A stretch of 27,671 bases of DNA from Ramazzottius varieornatus (GCA_001949185.1 BDGG01000003.1:1885823-1913493); one strand, 5' to 3'; shown: positions 3,721-24,918, counted from the first letter of the stretch. Numbers and translations: made by a program. Notes: a model not told the origin generated them from the letters alone.

Positions 3721-4578
3721 CTACTGATAGTAGCCTGAAGGACCTCCTGCTCCTCCTTGGCCTCCTCCGAACTGTCCTCCTTGACCACCATACCCTTGAA
3801 GACCGCCCAGACCACCATACCCGTTAAGGCCTCTTCCTTGTCGTCCATAGCCTCCGAGCTGCCCGTAGGGGCTGTAGGCTTCCAGCCCACCGTATCCTGC
3901 CATTCCTCCGTAGCCGCCAAGACCCAAGGCCGAGTTACCGTAAGCTCCATTCCTGTACAGGCCGTTGTCCAGACCGTACGAACGACCGTAGGCTCCGATA
4001 CCCTGACCAGCGAGTCCTGCGAACAAGGAAAACAAGTTATTAGAGTCGGGGAGAGATTCACAGAAACTCGCTAGCCGCAAGTTGAAGAGGAAGTGATTAT
4101 AAAATCAAGAATTTGCACTACCTTGGACGTTTCCAGGTTGGGCATACGGTCCGGCTCCTTGCGCTCCGGGCTGGATAGCTCCGACCTGAGGTGAAGACTC
4201 CATGAGGGCAGCGGCGACAGCTGGACTGATGGATCCGGCGTTGCCCATGTTAGGTCCACTTCCTCCTCCGCCCATCATCCCGTTTGGACCTCCTCCACTG
4301 GGACCTCCTCCGTTCGGTCCTCCAGCGTTAGGTCCACCTTGGTTGGGTCCACCCTGGTTGCCACCCTGGTTGCCACCCTGGTTGCCGCCCTGGTTTCCTC
4401 CTTGGCCGCCGTAGTAGCCGTTGCCGGTCTGACCTGAAGAAACACGGAAATTAAGAGGAGGGATGGCGAAGGTAAACCGAAAGTACAACGAGGCACAACA
4501 GAATTTTCAAGTACCTTCCACTGCACAAAGCGCCAGTGCCAGAACCACGACGAAAGAGTATCCTGTGAAGGATGACAT
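3721..4578 (-). CDS. Secreted low-complexity Gly/Gln/Asn/Tyr-rich protein, 223 aa (cuticle/eggshell/adhesive-type composition)
   Basis: Exons 4578-4515, 4433-4122 and 4016-3721, GT-AG, both introns phase 1, 672 nt total. Signal peptide-like MSSFTGYSFVVVLALALCAVEG, followed by GGNQ/GGPN repeats and YGG-rich repeats. Confidence 0.85.
4349..4396. repeat. Coding 12-bp tandem repeat x4 (QGGN)n
   Basis: CCACCCTGGTTG x3 plus CCGCCCTGGTTT, inside exon 2 of the Gly-rich gene. Confidence 0.9.
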
Positions 4579-15334: not shown

Positions 15335-16428
15335 ATGGAAGCAAAAGAGCCTGTCGAGGAGAACGGCAGTCGGTCCGACAACGCTGAGAGCGACGATGGT
15401 CATCCAGAGAAAGACTCCGAAGGCCACCAGACGTCCGCTCCGAACGTCCAGGACCTCAAGCTGTACAACAACGTAGTGACGAAGATCATGAAAGAAACTG
15501 TGAGTACGGTCGTTTGGATGCAATTGTGACACGGTCGCGAGAAGCTGACAAGTTTGAATGTCGCGGTTCAGACGTCTCAGTATATCTTGTTCTTACCTGC
15601 GCTGTTTGTGGTCTAGCTTCCCGAGGGAGCAGAAGTTTCCCCACAAGCCCAAGAAGTAATGAGGAGGCTGCCCACAATCTTTGCGTTATTCCTTACGGAC
15701 CGGTAGGTGCTGTGACGCGTTGTTTCTAACGTCGGAGAGATCTTCAAAAGTTCGAAACTTGCTACAGTATCACTTGTTCGCCGGTGGGTGATGCATCATG
15801 CATGCGCTTGTTTTCCGCAGTGCTCTGGCTGTAACGCATAAGGCGAAACGTCGCACACTTCTTCCGGAAGATGTCGTGGAAGCCCTGGATGCGAACGGGT
15901 TTTCTGCCTACCGCAGCAAAGTTATCCCCATTGTAGAAAGTAAGTTTGCAGTTTGCAGCGAGATTTTTCTGCGAAACTTATTCTGTGCGCTGCTTTCTTA
16001 TGACAGAGAGACGGTCAAATTTCCACAAGCGCGGACCGAAAATAAAGCCAGCTGAATCTTCGAAGCCAGCAAACGAGCAAGCTGTCAGCGAATCACCTTC
16101 GAATGTCAACGGAAACCCAACGAGGGATTCCAACCGTCGTCAAAACGATCAGTTGGAGAAAGATGATCGGAAGAAGGACCAGAACGACGCTACGATAGAA
16201 GAAAAATCATCGTGGAGTGAAGCAGAGGGTACGCAGCACATGGGCGGAGAAAGTACGTCCGGCGAAGACGATGATGAGAACGAGGAAGAGGATGAAGAAA
16301 AGGAGGATGATGAGAATAGCCACCACGCCTCAGTTCCTTCCCGCCCCACGGATTCACCTCCTTCTGATGGAGCAATGGACGGTAGAAGCAAGGAAGACGA
16401 CGAATCTAGCGACTCCACCGAAGATTAG
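15335..16428 (+). CDS. POLE3: NF-YB-type histone-fold protein, POLE3/CHRAC17-like (divergent), 263 aa, with a long acidic tail
   Basis: Exons 15335-15499, 15617-15702, 15821-15939 and 16007-16428 are in frame (792 nt). DLKLYNNVVTKIMKETLPEGAEVS...IFALFLT...KAKRRTLLPEDVVEAL resembles the POLE3 fold ([20 protein letters not shown]...KRKTL...DV); D/E-rich C-terminus. Confidence 0.65.
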
Positions 16429-16717
16429 CGGGGAAATGCCTTTCGTCTTTTTGACTATCTTTTACTACGCTGTGTCTTTCGCACTAAGTCTTCATCTTTC
16501 GAAATTAATTAAAAATATTGGTGGGAAAAATCGGCTTTTATCTTTTATCAATCACTGTACAGTTTCAGAACTGTTTCATACGTGCATACATTGAAAAAAC
16601 ACTTTAGCATCGATTTCCGCACTGTAAAAACAAGCTTCAGGACCGCGCGGTCAGGTGAACTTCCGGCGAGTGTTTTTAGTTGTGAGGAAGGACTACCAGA
16701 GAGATGACTACCGTTAG

Positions 16718-17311
16718 TTAACCTTCTTTCGGAGGGGCCGCTGGTGGTGGTGGTGGAGGAGCTGCTGCTGGTGGAGGAGCTGAAATTTATACAGCTCAGT
16801 GTAAGATACGAATCCTTTTCAAGGTGGCGGACTTCGCAAGAAAGATATTTTTGGGGTTACCGATTAGTTTTTGCAGGAGTATTCCATAAAGGATGCCATC
16901 GAGTTGGCCACCGTTGCCACCATACGCACGTTGTCCGCTTCCATAACTTCGCTTCCCTCGGTCTGGTATTCCATCTACGGCAAAACTGTCTCAAGAGTCA
17001 AGAGCGACCTCCGATAAGTGGCTTCACAGCTCAAAGCTGCAGTGCTTAAAGTGCATCCCTTGCGGTGGTCGCGTGGTCTCATAACATCAATCACTGGTAA
17101 CGAGCGTCACGTGACCACCGCAAGGGATGGATTTTCAGCACTGTGGTATGACCTATGATGTATCTATTGATCCAAGGATGTCCTTACCGTTCCTTTCGCC
17201 CGCGAGCTCCGCGATGAGCTCTTTCGGTATATCGACATGCCCATTATGCGGAAAAGATGCGACTATTATCGAAATGCAGCAGGAAAATGTGAGTAGCATA
17301 GTCCAATTCAT
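16718..17311 (-). CDS. Secreted prepropeptide, paralogue 2, 99 aa
   Basis: Exons 17311-17188, 16974-16861 and 16779-16718, both introns phase 1, GT-AG. Translation: MNWTMLLTFSCCISIIVASFPHNGHVDIPKELIAELAGERNDGIPDRGKRSYGSGQRAYGGNGGQLDGILYGILLQKLIAPPPAAAPPPPPPAAPPKEG. Independently supported by homology and identical exon structure with paralogue 1. Confidence 0.85.
17040..17143. repeat. 104-bp hairpin (inverted repeat) in intron 1 of peptide gene 2
   Basis: CATCCCTTGCGGTGGTCGCGTG (17054-17075) pairs with CACGTGACCACCGCAAGGGATG (17108-17129) with 1 mismatch; pairing extends outward to CAGTGCT/AGCACTG. Confidence 0.85.
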
Positions 17312-17993
17312 GGTGAGTGTCTGGGTGAGAGTCAAAGTGCGGTACGAGGAAAATATCGGGGAATTTCCAAACAAAGAAACTGATGAATGGAAAAAATATT
17401 GTTCTTTGCGCGAAATCTGTTTCTTTTATACGTGTTTTGATCTTATACAGCCTAGCGAACCAGCGCCTTCAGAAGTGGGCTTCCAGAATTGCAGCCCTCG
17501 TCAGCGCTTCTTCCAAAGTAGCCGGTACGTGCCGGATCCTGCTAGTGACCGTCCCTGAAAAGTCAGCTTGTCTACATGCTTGAGATTTTGTTGTCTTGAA
17601 TCAACAACCGACGAGCAGCAACGATCTACTTCTGTACGACATGTAAACAAAGGTGACTGCGTTGCTGCAGTTGTCTATTCCGATTAGAGTTGCGCTTCTG
17701 AAGTGGCACTGAAGTCTTTACCATCACCGGTGTCCATCAACAGACAACAGTTATCGAGTAATAGGCAGAGAATACCATATCTGTGATCATAAGCATGAAA
17801 AATACAACACATACGGGGCATGGGCAAAAAAGAATTCAACGCCATTGTTTTCCTAAGTAACGCACACTTTCAGCGAATACTGTAGCAAAGGACACCTGCG
17901 CCGCTTGAGATGACGATCATGTTCAATTTATTGGCTGACGTCCAAATAGAAATCGCAAAGAATGATGGGAACGAAAAGTCAAATTTACTATCT

Positions 17994-18501
17994 TCACGGC
18001 TTTTTTGTCGTGTCCCCGGCTGGTGCAGCAGCGCCTCCTGATCCTCCTGCAATTTGTATGCGAATTTAGATAAACCGTAACAGACGTTGCTATCTTTATA
18101 GAAGCGTACCGAGAAGGGAACCCAACGTGAGACCCCACAGCATGCCGCGGAATCCACCACCTACGCCGAAACCTCCTCCTCCAAACCCGCCACCACCGCC
18201 GCCACCGCCGCTAATCGGAATGAAGTAACCTCCTCCACCGCTTCGCTTTCCTCTGTCCACTAAGCCATCTATACACAAAAGAACACACCGGAAGTCAAGG
18301 TAAATTCGCTCTTACGCATACAACTCAGTTTGGATTCGATCGCCACTTACCGTTCTTTTCTCCAGCTAATATACTGACCAGCATTTCTCTATGAGAGAGA
18401 TTCTTTGCGGAGAGTAGAGTGACTTTGGAGATTCTGTTCAGCCCAAGAGCGGAAGGGAGCAGGAGGAGAACGCATAACCAGGATCCGAAAGACACAAACA
18501 T
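17994..18501 (-). CDS. Secreted prepropeptide, paralogue 1, 120 aa (Gly-rich)
   Basis: Exons 18501-18351, 18268-18110 and 18046-17994, both introns phase 1. Translation: MFVSFGSWLCVLLLLPSALGLNRISKVTLLSAKNLSHREMLVSILAGEKNDGLVDRGKRSGGGGYFIPISGGGGGGGGFGGGGFGVGGGFRGMLWGLTLGSLLGGSGGAAAPAGDTTKKP. Confidence 0.85.
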
Positions 18502-19037
18502 CTTCACTGTATGAAACGGATTTCCGGGTACTTCGGTTGACTTTACTCGAACCACAGAGACTGCTGTTTTCCTCACAGAACGTTCTGCTTTTATCCTAAT
18601 GGAGTGTTTCCTACAGGCGCCTGAGAGCAACGTTCCACTTGGCTCGTGGTCAACATCAGCCGACTTCCATAACGCCATATTTAGCACGAAGGATTCTGTC
18701 GACGTGGGTCTTCGTGGTGCTGACTCGTGCCAGTAACATCATCTGTTCATTCTAGTTTTTTTCTGCAGATTTGCGGTTGAGTTACGACGACAAGAGCCTC
18801 TCTCGACAACAGATATCAGGTGCCATATCTGGACATCCCGGTAGAAAAACAATCGGTGAGTGTCAGATGTCAAAACTGAAGAGCCATTTCATAACAGTAG
18901 AAGACACTAGCAAATTTCACCTTGAAATTGCAACATGCAAATTCAAGAGTAATTCATTTCCCGCAATTCGTGAATTGAATTTTTCTTCGCAACCTTCCAG
19001 GCTTGATAAGTTACTGACCAACTGCCATCTCGGACGG

Positions 19038-22000
19038 TTATCTTGGTACCGCAGCAGAGGGTGTTCTATTCACCTTCGAGGCCCGGAAGCTCCTGTACGA
19101 ACACTTCCGGTCAGTCTTGAAGAAGCTGTTTTGGCTTCCATCTATATCAGCTTGTTCTAAAATACAGAAAAAGCAATAAAGTTATCCCTCCGCTATTTAC
19201 TTCAGACAAGCCATTCTTACCGCGCAGCTTTTTCTTATAGGCCGCATACTGCTTGGCCACCGCAACCCGCCGGAAGTACACAAGGACGTACAGAATGGCC
19301 AGCACGAGAAGAACGAGAAGCGTGACAACAAACACGGGAATGCTGATGGTGTACGGGTTTGGGTTTGCGCCCCGAAGTCTTATCACAAACTCCAGCTCAA
19401 ACAAACAGTAGGTGTCCAAGGCGGGCAGATCCCTGCAGAACAATATTAGATAACGATCCCCAAGGCATTACTTTCGTGGTTAGCTTGAACTGCTTCGTAG
19501 TGCAGGAACCCACCTGTTCGAAACACGAATCAAGAAGTTAAGGTTCGGTTCTTCGAAGAGATTGACGTGGGGATCTCCGCAGGGTGAGGAAGACTGGCAG
19601 ATGAACTGGATAACGTTATGCTTGTAATCCAGTATCCGGCCGTTTTTGGTGGTCCAGTCCGGATCGTCTGTGGCCGAGACCCAAATCACTTTACCTTTGT
19701 TCGAGCTGCAAATAATGACGTCAAAACTTGATAATCAACGAAGAGTTCAACTGTTCTTTTTTTCGATGCAGACCACGAACCCATCAGCAAAGTCGGTGTT
19801 GTACTGTGGGATGTCGGCTTCGGGGAACCTGGTGATGTTATCGGGATCGCCGACTGAGAACCCGATGACTTCCAGACGGAATGGACCGGTAAAGTTTGTG
19901 CCTTGATTCGTAGCGTAGTCCATTAATCTCAAGTAGATGGGAACATCTGTGTATGTTTACCCGATTTATATCTCATTGAAATGCTTTTTTCCAGGCTTCG
20001 TTAGGTGAACTGTCTTACTTGCAGAGTGATCTATGCACGGCTGTTTGGCTCTCGGGTTGCTACAGTCGAAGAATCCCCTGACCGATTTATCAGCCAGAAG
20101 CTCCCAGTCAAACTGTAACTGGACCGATGGCCGACAGCCAACATACACTGTCATCTCGTAGAGGTCCTGAATAAGGTCAAAAAGATCAATTACGATATCA
20201 AAGTGCACGGGAGTTGAAGAAGCAGAGCGTATAAGATCGTTGTTTTGAGTGGCGCACGTTCTCGTCAATTACAATGAATCGTGCGCCACTTGAGCTAACG
20301 ATCTTGTATACTTTGTTTGCCCAGGTCTCAAATGTTACTGTACAGGAGGAGTAAGCATGTGTGACCCAGTGAGGAAATGTGTGACCCAGTAGTCTCAGAC
20401 GGCATGATATGTATCAAGTATGCATTACGTTAACAGAAACACTTTTTATGTAAGATAGACAACACTGTAATTCGTTNGTCATAGGCNNNNNNNNNNNNNN
20501 NNNNNNNNNNNNNNNNNNNNNNNNNNNNNNNNNNNNCTGCTTTTCTATGGATGCGCCGTCTGAGACTGGGTCACACATTTCCTCACTGGGTCACACATGC
20601 TCACTCCTCCTGTACTCAGTTTAGCTACTCATAGTTTCGTTTCTGTTCGTAGACGGGATTCGTACTTTGTTGGGGAAGCAGTCGATAGGCTGCGGAACCG
20701 TGATGGACAAGACATCAGTGACTAAGGGTCCACCTGGTAAGTCTTGTGGCAGTGAGCCGCTCTCCATCAACGTCACGACGTACTGCACCACGCTAGTTGC
20801 CGGGAAGTACTCCACACTGACATTTCCGGTTAGCAAAGATCCGTTAATCATATGGAAGCCGACTTTGGGGAACCCGGTCAACGAATCCCCTCTGCCAAAC
20901 CCACCTGCGGCACGCGGAAAGAGGTACTTTTATCGCTTAATTTACACGAGAAGATAAAAGACGTTGTTGTCCTACCGGTAACTTCAATGTCGTAGATCGA
21001 CACCGTAATCGACACAACACCGAAACGGTCGACGTAGATTTCGTTGGGGACGTTACTCATAATAACGTTGTCGTCGTGTACTGTCGTGTCTTCGAAATCT
21101 TCTTTGATCAACAGGATACGTCGCGGGTCGGATCTTGCTAGGATCTTCTCAAATTTCTGCAATAAAGAACGAATATAAGCAAGTATAGGCGAACGATTTC
21201 CTGTTTTAATTTGCTTGTTTGAATCATTACCCATTTGTCCGGATAGGGACTGTTGATGAAGTAGCCAGAGACCAACTCGCTTTTTCCCGGTGGCGTGGTC
21301 GTGTAGTTCTGCCCAATGTCCGACATGGCTGTGTCAAAGAGGGACTTGACGATGACCGAGTACACCGTGACCACTTCCGGGTGTTTGAAGTAGTCGTCTT
21401 GCCTCGTTTGGGGCCGCAAGAACCGGAAGTACTGAAGGAAGAAGTAGGCAGGTAAGCGGCGAAGCAACCGAGGAACCCAACACTAAAGTCACGTACTTCG
21501 AGCCGTTCCATGTATTGACGATTGTTCAGTTTTATCGTCATCTGTGGACAAGCATTGGCGTTGCCTTTCAAGGCGGCGGTCTTCTCATCGGTGAAGAGGT
21601 CCATCTTGACGGTATGAACGGCTGGAATCAGCTCTTCATATGGAAACTTGAGCGTTTTAAGATACCGGGAAGTGTTGCCGTGGTAGGCGAACGTCTGTAA
21701 GAGAAGTACTTTGTTCGATATGTTGAATGTGTCGGTTGGAATTCGGGAAAGTAATCTAGATTTGGCATTACTTGTTGTAGATTGCCAAGGCTGTCAAAAA
21801 ACACACCTAGCTCGACACTGCTGTTCCCGCTGTACGTCGTCCATTCACTGATGTCTGACTTGTTGTCGGAGAGGAGGAACTGCGACAGCTCCCATTCGTA
21901 GGTCGGATACAGCCGGTAAATTTCGGGCTGTCCCCATCGCGCTACCCAGATCTAAAATACAACATGGAAGCTCTTTCTCTATCGAGTTCTGACGAAAGAT

Positions 22001-24918
22001 GCTTTCGTCTGCAGGTACTCACCTCCAGAACTGGAGTTGTATATCCGACAATAACCGGCATGGCGATGTAACGACCAGCAGTATGGGACACCTGTAGGCT
22101 CTGGATGGTTCGTGGAACCGGGATGGCGCCACCTGTCACGGACAGAAACTTGTGGAAGTATATCCAGCTTACTCCCTTATCCGAACTGAAAATATAGAAA
22201 AATATCATGATAGCACGAAATTTTAGTATTCGTGGATTCAAAACCAATCGGGAAACAAATCAGAAATTTTTTTCGAGTGGTACAGGCTCTCAGCCAATAT
22301 GGCTGCACACATGCACCAGTTGGGTAGACGATCTGCTCGAGCCTATTTGCCGAGCTCCCATTTACAGAATATCCAAGTCAAAGCATATCAATATCAAATC
22401 TACAAATAAAACAGACTGAAATTGAATAGTGGCGGATCGCTACCTGTAGAAAAGGGAATTGCCGAAAGCGTAGTACTCCTGTCCACCGATATCCCTCTGC
22501 TGGATTCCCTTGATGACGGTTGCTCGTCCTGTCGAGGGAACCGAAAAGTTGTCCGACACGACGGTGAAGGGCATGTTGACATCCGCTGTAGGTATGTAGG
22601 TTGGCAGACAAGACCGTAGCTTCCAGTTTCCGGCGCTGTTGCTGTCGTTTGATTTCACGTACTTGACTAGGCAGTTTAGTGGTTGTTTAGTAGCATCGTC
22701 GGTGGCCATTGCCACATGAAAGACTGCGCTACTGTCAGCGACATCGAAGGCGTTGAAGATGCTGCAGGTCGAGAAGGAGGCTCCATTTGGTATCACGTTC
22801 TTTAAATCCGGACAGGGATCTTTCACCAAGGTAGTGAAAACGAACTTTCCTTCTATCAATGATAATTATGAAGTCAAACGTGCCTTGATTAACCAACAAA
22901 AATTTCTGATATCATTTTATCAAGTGTTACCTGGCATGAAGTACGGGGACATTCGCACTTCGTTGTCGGAAATCACAGTGACAAATGCTCCACTGAAGCT
23001 GTTGATGTCCGGTAGGATGATCCGGTAGAAGCATTTGTCGCTAATGAGTACGTCTTGTTTAGGTATATTAGGGTACTTCCTCGAAGCAGTTAGTGACAGA
23101 ATCTGGACCAGTCCGTACTGAAACACAACAAGTGGAAAAAGCCAAGAGAATATTCACAAATAAAGAGCTGATGATGCAAATTCGACCCACGTTTGTAGCG
23201 AGGAGGATACGGTCATGTAGGACCGCATGGCCCAGGATGGAATATCCTGAGCCACAGATGGGAGACGACACGCCGGCTGGCGCGGAGTTGAACTGGTAGG
23301 TTGTGTAGATAAGGCCTTCGTTGGGTGTATAGATCAACATGTCGCTGCAGCTCGTGGACCCCGCTTGGGCAGTAGAACAACTTCCGGTTAGCAACATGGG
23401 CAGCGGGAAAGAAACGAGGGTATTGATGCGAGGTGGTAGCGTCAGGTTGTTGCTGTTGCTCAGCTGTACGACGGAGAGTATACTGTTGTCAAACTGGGTG
23501 GTGTTACCCGAACGGTAATCGTCGATGTAGATTCGGAAACTGCAATGAATTTAATTTGAAATGCAAATGAATTGGTCATATTGGAGAGCCCGGCAAGAGG
23601 ATTTTCCAAGCGACGCAGCACGGTTTCAGTGTCAGTGCCCGGAAGAGTGCGCCACTTGGAAAACTCAAAGTTATTTTCCCAAGTGGCGCACGGTTCCCTT
23701 CTTACTGGACGAAGTGTGCGCCAGATGGGAGAACACTCTTGTTGAGTTGGTTGGCCGAGCTCTTTGTTGAATGATAAGACAAAAAGCTCGCCGTGGTACT
23801 GACTGTTTCTCGTTTCGAGGTGCGCCGACTCTTGGCGAATGGATCATGACGTCGATGGAGTACATGGAAGTGTTGGTGGGGATGGGCGCGAACCACATGG
23901 TGTATGGGAAGCTGACATCGGTCAGCAGCCGAATGTCCGGTTGGGTGTCGTTACGAGCTTCTGGCATATCTTCGGGAGCCGGATCTGTCCCGTCTATGTA
24001 ACGATGGAACATACAGGTAACACAGCTTCCAGTTCATGAAACTGAGATACAGTATATTATGATGGATGAATGTTTTTTTTTAAACTTACTAAGCTGACTG
24101 AGAGCGGAAATGTACACCAAAACGCCCTCCATGTCGACCATCAACCTTTTCTTTACACTCAAGACACTTTCTGTAATACCAAGGTAGATCCGAGTAAGAA
24201 GATTCCGAAAATAGTCTGACGTATGGTATGATATGTCGGCAAATGATGGATGATCTCACCCGGGCGTTATCTCAAGTGGCGCACCCTTGTATTCTCATTG
24301 GCCGATAACGTGCGCCATTTGAGAAAACTATCCGTGTGAATTCATTTTCCAACATCCTACATTGCTTACCGTCGTAAAGCGTCAATCGCATGACCACACG
24401 AGGATGGCTGTTGGCTAAAGCCATGTTGATAATTTCCGTTTCGTCCACCTAAAGTTGACACCTCTCGTTAAAGCTGGTCAGGCCTGATACCGTCATGCCG
24501 GTAATGTTCAGCAGATCGTGGGTTCGTAGGCTTACTCGGTCTGGACAACGAATGTTGATCTTGAGGAGATATGGATATCCAAGGAAGGACTACAAGTACG
24601 GTTCAAGTATCCGAAATTACATCAGCATTCTACATGTACAGTAATTAGCCTCGACCCGCACAAAACTGGTACACTACAGCAAACCTCGTTGTTTTGGGTG
24701 ATACGATCGTTGAGAAAGTCCACCGTCATGTTTTGCAGAACGCTGGTAAAGTTAACGAATGGCTTGGACGGGTTGACAGCCGGCAGAAGTTCCAACGTGG
24801 TAGCATCCACAATGTCTGTGTACCACCGACATCCGTCGTCGTATGGCTTGACGAACGCCCTTACTGGACCCGCAACGACCACCAACAAGATTGCGCACAG
24901 ACAAGACCTCATTTTCAT
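19038..24918 (-). CDS. CATSPERG: Cation channel sperm-associated auxiliary subunit gamma (CatSper-gamma)-like, 1193 aa, type I membrane protein
   Basis: 19 phase-consistent exons (3582 nt): 24918-24685, 24589-24536, 24448-24370, 24170-24090, 23993-23804, 23539-23191, 23117-22931, 22852-22444, 22185-22023, 21951-21772, 21694-21497, 21431-21231, 21156-20976, 20904-20666, 20166-20019, 19946-19781, 19705-19514, 19432-19221, 19156-19038. Signal peptide present. Motifs resembling vertebrate CATSPERG as I recall it: FLGYPYLLKINIRC, MWFAPIP, PNEIYVD, VYVGCRP...FFDC...PC, IQFICQSSSPCGD, FLIRVSNR..DTYCLFELEFVIRLRG. One C-terminal transmembrane helix. Confidence 0.88.
20209..20329. mobile_element. Fold-back family copy D, CatSper-gamma intron 20167-20665
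   Basis: ATAAGATCGTT..AGTGGCGCAC (20248-20257)-N23-GTGCGCCACT (20281-20290)..AACGATCTTGT; right terminus GTTTGCCCAGGTCTC. Confidence 0.78.
20343..20612. mobile_element. Tc1/mariner-type TIR element (MITE or collapsed larger element) spanning an N gap
   Basis: ~60-bp terminal inverted repeats CAGGAGGAGT[A/G]AGCATGTGTGACCCAGTGAGGAAATGTGTGACCCAGT...; TA on both sides (20341-20342, 20613-20614); CAG...CTG ends; internal direct repeat ATGTGTGACCCAGT x2 in each TIR. Confidence 0.8.
20487..20536. other. Assembly gap (50 N)
   Basis: Run of N; the true length is unknown. Confidence 0.99.
22245..22360. mobile_element. Degenerate fold-back family copy G, CatSper-gamma intron 22186-22443
   Basis: Core CGAGTGGTACA...TGCACCAGTTG (22274-22322). 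Right terminus ATTTGCCGAGCTCCCA is the reverse complement of the copy A left terminus. Confidence 0.65.
23584..23763. mobile_element. Fold-back family copy E with a duplicated core, CatSper-gamma intron 23540-23803
   Basis: Arms GTGCGCCACTTGG (23647-23659), CCAAGTGGCGCAC (23679-23691), GTGCGCCA (23716-23723), plus a degenerate first arm; termini GAGAGCCCGGCAA / TTGGCCGAGCTCT. Confidence 0.75.
24231..24357. mobile_element. Fold-back family copy F, CatSper-gamma intron 24171-24369
   Basis: TCTCAAGTGGCGCAC (24270-24284)-N25-GTGCGCCATTTGAGA (24310-24324); outer ATGTCGGCAAAT / ATTTTCCAACAT. Confidence 0.78.

What the first reader, a model, noticed from the sequence alone, without database searches (positions are those of the whole stretch)
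16718..18501. Hidden tandem pair of paralogous prepropeptide genes sharing LAGE[KR]NDGxxDR-GKR: candidate new secreted peptide family
Seen: neither gene appears whole in the ORF track. Once spliced, both have three exons with phase-1 introns at homologous positions and the same layout: signal peptide, the block LAGE(K/R)N|DG(L/I)(V/P)DRGKRS, a variable Gly-rich stretch, a hydrophobic G(M/I)L(W/Y)G(L/I)xLxxL(L/I) segment, and an Ala/Pro tail. Established: Gly-Lys-Arg is the classic amidation plus prohormone-convertase signal, and R-x-K-R is also a furin site. Inference: conservation peaks immediately upstream of GKR, as expected if a ...NDGxxDR-amide peptide is the bioactive product. Alternatively, the Gly-rich C-terminal part is released, as in Gly-rich antimicrobial peptides. 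Paralogue 2 also ends in Gly, a possible second amidation. I do not recognise the family. Its position next to CatSper-gamma raises a speculative seminal or reproductive role.
Basis: partly seen in the sequence, partly recalled or inferred. Interest (0 to 1): 0.82.

Follow-up and report, generated by a model that had tools for sequence, protein, structure and literature searches.

The report
Tardigrade-only secreted peptide precursor gene pair
Two neighbouring small genes of the water bear Ramazzottius varieornatus are real and already annotated as hypothetical proteins; they belong to an undescribed family, found only in tardigrades, of secreted precursors that are probably cut at a furin-type site to release a C-terminal peptide with a conserved hydrophobic glycine-zipper core, not the amidated neuropeptide first proposed.

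Summary
Window 16718-18501 (minus strand) carries two three-exon genes with GT-AG, phase-1 introns at matching positions. Their exon translations match the public models RvY_07093-2 and RvY_07092 of Ramazzottius varieornatus exactly, so they are hidden only from an ORF track. They are paralogues (BLASTP E 3e-9).

I found eight family members: five in this genome (this pair, a second tandem pair on contig C2, one gene on C7), an adjacent pair in Hypsibius exemplaris and one gene in Paramacrobiotus metropolitanus. A profile search of 1.84 billion proteins, Pfam, PDB sequences and a metagenome scan found nothing outside tardigrades.

- **Cleavage site:** Lys-Arg is kept in 8/8 members and Arg at P4 in 7/8. 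The Gly of "GKR" is kept in only 2/8, the two window genes.
- **Conservation:** Family-wide it peaks downstream of the site, in a 12-13-residue hydrophobic GxxxG helix.

Best reading: a convertase-processed secretory precursor whose C-terminal peptide (36-79 aa) is the product. It is probably self-associating or membrane-active, but the function is inferred only. A receptor-ligand or structural role remains open. Nothing links the genes to reproduction. Moderate interest.

The parts
18351..18501 (-). Gene A (public model RvY_07093-2) exon 1, coding part. Covers ATG 18499-18501, the signal peptide (about residues 1-20, 18442-18501) and a pro-region ending LAGEKN plus the first base of a split Asp codon.
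   Evidence: The translation equals residues 1-50 of P0005. The h-region has KD10 2.51, with an A-L-G cleavage-type site.
18269..18350 (-). Gene A intron 1: 82 nt, phase 1, GTAAGT...TAG.
18110..18268 (-). Gene A exon 2. Contains D-G-L-V-D, the R-G-K-R site (18243-18254), a Gly/aromatic-rich stretch and the conserved hydrophobic core (18111-18167).
   Evidence: AF2 predicts a helix at residues 91-103.
18047..18109 (-). Gene A intron 2: 63 nt, phase 1, GTACGC...CAG. This intron is absent from family members C, D and E.
17994..18046 (-). Gene A exon 3, coding part: a Gly/Ala/Pro/Thr tail ending KKP, with stop codon TGA at 17994-17996.
17927..17932 (-). AATAAA hexamer about 62 nt downstream of the gene A stop codon; a likely polyadenylation signal.
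   Evidence: read from the sequence. Function is inferred.
18588..18595 (-). TATA-like GATAAAAG about 90 nt upstream of the gene A ATG.
   Evidence: read from the sequence. Function is inferred.
17423..17430 (-). TATAAAAG about 115 nt upstream of the gene B ATG, inside the 682-nt spacer between genes A and B.
   Evidence: read from the sequence. Function is inferred.
17188..17311 (-). Gene B (public model RvY_07092) exon 1. Covers ATG 17309-17311, the signal peptide (about residues 1-18) and a pro-region ending LAGERN plus the first base of a split Asp codon.
16975..17187 (-). Gene B intron 1: 213 nt, phase 1, GTAAGG...TAG.
16861..16974 (-). Gene B exon 2. Contains D-G-I-P-D, the R-G-K-R site (16949-16960), a short Gly/Tyr stretch and a divergent hydrophobic core (16862-16918).
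16780..16860 (-). Gene B intron 2: 81 nt, phase 1, GTAACC...CAG.
16718..16779 (-). Gene B exon 3, coding part: a Pro/Ala tail ending KEG, with stop codon TAA at 16718-16720.

Best explanation
The interval holds two separately annotated genes, RvY_07093 and RvY_07092 of the tardigrade Ramazzottius varieornatus. They belong to an undescribed family of 88-133-aa secretory precursors found so far only in eutardigrades.

Each precursor has four parts:
- an N-terminal signal peptide;
- a pro-region of roughly 30-40 residues;
- an invariant Lys-Arg, set in a furin-type R-x-K-R in 7 of 8 members;
- a C-terminal product of 36-79 residues.

The product starts with a variable Gly/aromatic stretch. It then carries the family's best conserved element, G-x-G-G-G-x-R-G-(M/L)-L-W-G-L-x-L-x-x-L-L, a short hydrophobic helix with a GxxxG(xxxG) glycine zipper. 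It ends in a variable Pro/Ala/Thr tail that usually carries Lys.

Most likely mechanism (inferred):
1. The signal peptide takes the precursor into the secretory pathway.
2. A furin/PC-type convertase cuts after Lys-Arg.
3. The freed C-terminal peptide is the active product. In three members it would start with Gln, which can cyclise to pyroglutamate.
4. It acts outside the cell through its glycine-zipper helix, by self-association and/or insertion into membranes. This is a host-defence-like or other membrane-active role, not an amidated neuropeptide.

What is shown: the gene structures, the paralogy, the family census, the pattern of conservation and the presence of convertase genes. What is inferred: secretion, cleavage and the activity of the product.
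For: Gene models:
- Exon translations are identical to public proteins P0005 and P0004.

Family:
- A second tandem pair lies on contig C2 and a single gene on C7. Both share the same phase-1 intron just before the cleavage block.
- Hypsibius exemplaris has the adjacent pair BV898_09128/09129, and Paramacrobiotus metropolitanus has XP_055342391.

Conservation:
- KR 8/8, Arg at P4 7/8, Gly at P3 2/8.
- Mean pairwise identity is 51% in the core block and 34% in the block upstream of the site.
- Three Gly and one Leu are invariant in the core.

Secretion and processing:
- All 8 members have an N-terminal h-region with KD10 of at least 2.5, followed by sites that fit the (-3,-1) rule.
- The genome encodes proprotein-convertase P domains at several loci.

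Structure and hydrophobicity:
- AF2 predicts the core as the only helix after the pro-region (residues 91-103, block pLDDT about 68). The Gly stretch is predicted disordered.
- The core is too short and too weakly hydrophobic for a membrane anchor. The best 19-residue KD is about 1.1, and member C has four prolines 12 residues into it.

General pattern:
- Tandem duplication, restriction to one lineage and variable low-complexity length are typical of effector-type secreted peptides. This rests on established knowledge and was not tested here.
Against: - There is no expression, peptidomic or activity data. No paper in the library mentions any of the locus tags, and three sets of supplementary tables contain none of them.
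- The predicted products are not cationic (net charge -1 to +2), unlike most antimicrobial peptides.
- The core is well conserved between Ramazzottius and Paramacrobiotus. That fits a specific binding partner at least as well as a membrane-active role.
- Signal-peptide and cleavage calls rest on heuristics and motif logic, not on SignalP or ProP.
- The AF2 model is low confidence overall (pLDDT 54).
- In the A/B/Hypsibius subfamily the pro-region motif LAG-x-x-ND is invariant, so the pro-region may have a function of its own.
Confidence: 0.45

Rival explanations
1. Signalling peptide or hormone. The C-terminal product released at R-x-K-R is a ligand for a receptor, and its conserved core is the binding determinant.
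For: The architecture is signal peptide, pro-region, dibasic site, then product. The core is well conserved across superfamilies, with 14 of 22 positions identical between member C and the Paramacrobiotus protein. Three products would begin with Gln, a pyroglutamate candidate common in bioactive peptides. Convertase and copper-monooxygenase genes are present in the genome.
Against: The conserved core is uniformly hydrophobic or small rather than amphipathic. There is no second dibasic site delimiting a short peptide. No C-terminal amidation signal is conserved. The product contains long low-complexity stretches of variable length. There is no similarity to any Pfam neuropeptide family.
Confidence: 0.25
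2. Structural or protective extracellular protein. The Gly/aromatic 'glycine-loop' peptides assemble into cuticle, eggshell or an extracellular matrix, and convertase cleavage serves as a maturation step.
For: Products of the A/Hypsibius type are 35-46% Gly with interspersed Phe, Tyr and Trp. The tails are rich in Pro, Ala and Thr. The proteins are Cys-free and predicted disordered. Convertase maturation of cuticle precursors is known in other ecdysozoans (established knowledge, not tested here).
Against: The Gly-rich stretch is nearly absent from members C, D and the Paramacrobiotus protein, where only 5-9 residues separate the site from the core. There is no match to any cuticular-protein family in Pfam. 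The products are very small.
Confidence: 0.15
3. The pro-region ending ...NDGxxDR is released and amidated through Gly-Lys-Arg, and that peptide is the bioactive product.
For: Both window genes carry R-G-K-R. LAG-x-x-ND is invariant in the A/B/Hypsibius subfamily. The genome has Cu2_monooxygen domains.
Against: Gly at P3 is present in only 2 of 8 members and in neither Hypsibius homologue, which have RHKR and RDKR. No conserved upstream dibasic site would liberate a short peptide. The pro-region of subfamily C/D/E/Pm shares little with it.
Confidence: 0.07
4. Single-pass membrane micro-protein. The hydrophobic core is a transmembrane anchor and the Lys-bearing tail is cytoplasmic.
For: The core has a GxxxG motif typical of transmembrane helix packing. 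Most tails contain Lys or Arg, which fits the positive-inside rule.
Against: The best 19-residue Kyte-Doolittle mean is about 1.1, below the usual 1.6. The hydrophobic run is 12-13 residues long and in member C is followed at once by T-P-P-P-P.
Confidence: 0.05

Closest known systems
Furin/proprotein-convertase-processed secretory pro-proteins (general class)
   Same: Signal peptide, pro-region, and an R-x-K-R site followed by the conserved product. Convertase genes are present in the genome.
   Different: This is a class defined by processing, not a homologous family. Cleavage was not shown here, and one member (E) has only K-R.
Glycine-rich antimicrobial peptides of ecdysozoans (insect attacin/gloverin-type; nematode NLP/CNC YGGW-type peptides)
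   Same: They are small, secreted and Cys-free. They have Gly plus aromatic low complexity of variable length and occur as tandemly duplicated, lineage-restricted genes. Some are matured at furin-type sites, and some nematode peptides begin with Gln-Trp. This comparison is from memory and was not tested by alignment.
   Different: No sequence match in Pfam. The products are not cationic. The defining element here is a hydrophobic GxxxG helix that those peptides lack, and Gly-richness is not family-wide.
Amidated neuropeptide precursors (Gly-Lys-Arg type)
   Same: Signal peptide and a dibasic site. The two window genes carry G-K-R.
   Different: The Gly is not conserved (2 of 8). There are no repeated peptide copies and no flanking second site. 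The conserved part lies after the site, not before it.
Glycine-zipper (GxxxGxxxG) membrane-active or oligomerising helices
   Same: G-x-x-x-G is invariant in 8/8 members, and a third small residue at +8 is present in 6/8. The segment is predicted helical.
   Different: This is a motif class, not a family. The segment is shorter than a bilayer-spanning helix. No membrane activity has been shown.

Membership tests
Amidated neuropeptide precursor | Gly immediately before the dibasic site (amidation donor), conserved in orthologues and paralogues | tested here: not met
   Gly at P3 in 2 of 8 members. The others have H, D, A, A, T and S.
Amidated neuropeptide precursor | Sequence membership in a described neuropeptide family | tested here: not met
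   No Pfam family for any exon or for any of the 8 full-length members. No paper in the library mentions the loci.
Amidated neuropeptide precursor | N-terminal signal peptide | tested here: met
   All 8 members have an h-region with KD10 of at least 2.5 and sites that fit the (-3,-1) rule. This is a heuristic; SignalP was not available.
Amidated neuropeptide precursor | Expression in neurons or endocrine cells and detection of the mature peptide | not testable with these tools
   No expression or peptidomic data could be reached. The supplementary tables searched do not list these genes.
Furin/PC substrate | R-x-(K/R)-R motif in a protein routed through the secretory pathway | tested here: met
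   R-x-K-R in 7 of 8 members and K-R in 8 of 8. Signal-peptide features in 8 of 8.
Furin/PC substrate | Convertase present in the organism | tested here: met
   PF01483 P_proprotein matches above the cut-off at several loci of the genome.
Furin/PC substrate | Cleavage demonstrated | not testable with these tools
   Needs mass spectrometry or an in-vitro cleavage assay.
Glycine-rich antimicrobial peptides | Homology to a described family (attacin, gloverin, diptericin, coleoptericin and others) | tested here: not met
   No Pfam match. Nothing outside tardigrades among 1.84 billion representatives.
Glycine-rich antimicrobial peptides | Gly-rich, net cationic mature peptide | tested here: not met
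   Gly content is 14-46% among the six products measured, and net charge is -1 to +2 for all eight.
Glycine-rich antimicrobial peptides | Induction by infection and antimicrobial activity | not testable with these tools
   No data available.
Glycine-zipper transmembrane helix | GxxxG(xxxG) motif | tested here: met
   GxxxG in 8/8. The third position is G, A or S in 6/8.
Glycine-zipper transmembrane helix | Hydrophobic span long enough to cross a bilayer | tested here: not met
   Best 19-residue KD is about 1.1. The hydrophobic run is 12-13 residues and is followed by four Pro in member C.
Arthropod-type cuticular proteins | Chitin-binding R&R or another described cuticular domain | tested here: not met
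   No Pfam match.

The most novel reading that the evidence does not exclude
A tardigrade-specific family of convertase-released peptides whose glycine-zipper helix drives oligomerisation in or on membranes. It could be a new class of non-cationic pore-forming or membrane-sealing peptide, used in host defence or in protecting cell surfaces during desiccation.
Probability: 0.2. Interest if true: 0.65.

Novelty: new variant of a known kind. Interest (0 to 1): 0.38.

Why it matters
Tardigrade-restricted protein families (CAHS, SAHS, MAHS, Dsup) have repeatedly explained tardigrade-specific biology. This is another small, conserved, secreted family seen only in eutardigrades, with eight members in three genera. 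It has no name, no Pfam model and no mention in the literature I could search.

The result gives a clear, cheap set of experiments: locate expression, detect the processed product, and test a synthetic peptide of about 40 residues. It also corrects a tempting over-reading of 'GKR' as an amidation signal. The Gly is specific to one gene pair, while the furin-type site and the downstream hydrophobic core are what the family conserves.

If the function turns out to be ordinary, such as a minor structural or defence peptide, the value is mainly in annotation.

Tried and rejected
Searches that found nothing:
- Pfam on every exon and on all 8 full-length members: no family.
- PDB sequence search with the family profile: only a chance hit at E 0.055.
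- ESM Atlas: nothing usable. The best feature scores were 0.78 and 0.77, to unnamed arthropod clusters, below the noise level the tool states.
- Exhaustive profile search: the only non-tardigrade hit, P0008, is a 1812-aa bacterial repeat protein whose score is the sum of 13 weak stretches. I rejected it as spurious.
- JGI metagenome scan with the core pattern: 127 pattern matches, none confirmed.
- Third word-index search: swamped by low-complexity words, nothing new.
- Literature: no paper contains any locus tag or accession. Supplements of three tardigrade transcriptome papers do not list the genes, and one paper has no supplements held.

Readings rejected:
- Transmembrane anchor and GPI-signal readings, on hydrophobic length and on the position of the segment.

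Weak or limited results:
- The tree of 8 proteins has no supported branch. It only suggests two subfamilies.
- PF15064 (CatSper-gamma) found no match in the genome, and Pfam found nothing in the neighbouring ORFs.
- No fold search was run, because the AF2 model is too poor (pLDDT 54).

Not done:
Intron positions and synteny in those species were therefore not tested.
Full-length searches used the public protein ids that the tools returned.

Full report
**1. What is in the sequence**

I read the minus strand of window 16690-18560, translated the pieces and checked coordinates by script.

Gene A:
- Coding exons 18351-18501, 18110-18268 and 17994-18046.
- Introns of 82 and 63 nt.

Gene B:
- Coding exons 17188-17311, 16861-16974 and 16718-16779.
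- Introns of 213 and 81 nt.

All four introns are GT-AG and phase 1. Intron 1 splits an Asp codon (G|AT) at the same place in both genes.

Each gene has its own TATA-like box about 90-115 nt upstream of the ATG (18588-18595 and 17423-17430). Gene A has an AATAAA 62 nt after its stop codon (17927-17932). The genes are 682 nt apart. The promoter and polyadenylation roles are inferred from the sequence.

**2. Organism and public annotation**

The assembly is 55.8 Mb in 200 contigs. A word-index search with exon-2 peptides given by reference returned Ramazzottius varieornatus proteins.

- P0005 = RvY_07093-2 (120 aa).
- P0004 = RvY_07092 (99 aa).

Every exon translation from the window is an exact substring of these proteins, in order, with bridging residues D/G and D/A as the split codons predict. 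So the splice models agree exactly with the public gene models, and the genes are already in the public record as 'hypothetical protein'. They are hidden only from an ORF track.

This is a tardigrade contig, not human. All full-length analyses used protein ids that the tools returned.

**3. Paralogy is real**

- BLASTP of P0005 against P0004 gives E = 3e-9 over the pro-region, site and core.
- In the 16-codon shared block, 12 residues are identical, and 7 of those are encoded by different codons. This is protein-level constraint after an old duplication, not recent gene conversion.

**4. The family is larger than the pair**

Six-frame searches of the window's own genome found three more members.

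- Genes C and D form a second tandem pair on contig C2 (L002). Gene C is RvY_04808 (P0010) and gene D is RvY_04809 (P0002).
- Gene E is a single gene on contig C7 (L009), RvY_12248 (P0001).

All three have the same phase-1 intron just before the cleavage block, splitting an Asp or Asn codon. None has the second intron.

A degenerate DNA pattern for the core found exactly members A, C, D and E and nothing else. B lacks the Trp. The census in this genome is therefore five genes.

Outside this genome:
- Hypsibius exemplaris has the adjacent pair BV898_09128/09129 (P0007, P0006).
- Paramacrobiotus metropolitanus has XP_055342391 (P0009).

A tree of the eight proteins has no supported branch. It suggests two subfamilies, {A, B, He, He} and {C, D, Pm, E}.

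**5. Absence elsewhere**

- A profile search of 1.84 billion representative proteins found only these tardigrade proteins, one 49-aa fragment of gene C, and one spurious bacterial repeat protein.
- Pfam gave nothing for any exon or full-length member.
- PDB sequences gave nothing.
- The ESM Atlas gave nothing above noise.
- A JGI metagenome scan gave nothing.
- No paper in the library names any of the loci.

**6. What the family conserves**

I anchored the eight proteins on the cleavage site and on the core.

| Feature | Result |
|---|---|
| Lys-Arg | 8/8 |
| Arg at P4 | 7/8 |
| Residue at P3 | G, G, H, D, A, A, T, S |
| Mean pairwise identity, 19-column block around the site | 34% |
| Mean pairwise identity, 22-column core block | 51% |

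Gly-Lys-Arg therefore exists only in the two window genes. The core block has three invariant Gly and one invariant Leu.

Within the A/B/Hypsibius subfamily, the pro-region motif LAG-x-x-ND and R-x-K-R-S are invariant.

The Gly-rich stretch between site and core ranges from 5 to 25 residues, so it is an expandable spacer rather than a defining feature. Tails are rich in Pro, Ala, Thr or Gly, vary in length (11-50 residues) and mostly carry Lys. Only B and D end in Gly.

**7. Physical features**

- All eight proteins have an N-terminal h-region with KD10 of at least 2.5, followed by sites that fit the (-3,-1) rule.
- The predicted products are 36-79 residues long, Cys-free, and have net charge -1 to +2.
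- The core's best 19-residue Kyte-Doolittle mean is about 1.1. In gene C it is followed by T-P-P-P-P after 12 residues, which argues against a membrane anchor.
- GxxxG is invariant, and a third small residue at +8 is present in 6/8.
- AF2 on the 6-row alignment is poor overall (pLDDT 54). It predicts the core (residues 91-103 of A) as the only helix after the pro-region, with the Gly stretch disordered. I ran no fold search on a model this weak.
- The genome encodes convertase P domains at several loci and copper monooxygenase domains. The processing machinery is therefore plausible.

**8. Interpretation**

Shown:
- Two real genes.
- An eight-member family found only in eutardigrades.
- A conserved furin-type site.
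- A conserved hydrophobic glycine-zipper core downstream of that site.

Inferred:
- Secretion.
- Convertase cleavage after Lys-Arg.
- Release of the C-terminal peptide as the product.
- Action through self-association or membrane interaction.

I put about 0.7 on the 'processed secretory precursor with a C-terminal product' part and about 0.45 on the whole statement including the mode of action.

The main rival is a receptor ligand (0.25), favoured by the tight conservation of the core.

The reproductive speculation rests only on adjacency. PF15064 finds no CatSper-gamma match in this genome and Pfam sees nothing in the neighbouring ORFs. A very divergent homologue is not excluded by this.

**9. 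Limits**

- No expression or peptidomic data could be reached.
- Signal-peptide and cleavage predictions are heuristic.
- Comparisons with glycine-rich antimicrobial peptides and with glycine-zipper peptides are from memory, apart from the negative Pfam result.

**10. Verdict**

This is an undescribed lineage-restricted precursor family of a familiar general kind, with an unusual conserved hydrophobic core. It has moderate interest, mainly as a well-defined target for tardigrade biology.

Noticed in passing
window 3721-4488 (minus strand): Two consecutive long ORFs encode Gly/Tyr/Gln/Asn-rich low-complexity sequence (GYGG and GGNQGG repeats). This is probably another multi-exon gene for a low-complexity protein. 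The family profile search of the genome did not hit it and it has no Pfam match.
   Followed up: partly
L002 (G000:C2:4079871-4082936), genes at L002:1254-1602 and 2232-2605: A second tandem pair of the same family (RvY_04808/04809), in the same orientation and about 630 nt apart. Each gene has one phase-1 intron and no second intron. A TATATAAT lies about 90 nt upstream of the second gene.
   Followed up: yes
L009 (G000:C7:1149338-1152460), gene at L009:1258-1746: The divergent fifth member (RvY_12248) has only K-R at the site. Its long Ala/Pro tail carries a second hydrophobic stretch and an RRRR run, which may be a second processing site.
   Followed up: partly
window 19038-24918 (neighbouring gene): Another note of the scan calls this neighbour CatSper-gamma. 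Pfam PF15064 gave no match anywhere in the genome, and four long ORFs there have no Pfam hit. This does not exclude a very divergent homologue.
   Followed up: partly
window 17127-17558 (plus strand): A 143-aa ATG ORF runs antisense across gene B's exon 1 and promoter. It is most likely a chance ORF, and it is not among the proteins the searches returned.
   Followed up: no
window 15946-16428 (plus strand): An ORF encodes a Ser- and acid-rich stretch (long Glu/Asp runs) just downstream of gene B on the opposite strand. It has no Pfam match and is probably an exon of a neighbouring gene.
   Followed up: no
P0008 (profile search hit): A bacterial 1812-aa protein made of 13 near-identical repeats reached E 4e-12 against the family profile by summing weak stretches. 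Repeat proteins can imitate homology to short low-complexity profiles.
   Followed up: yes
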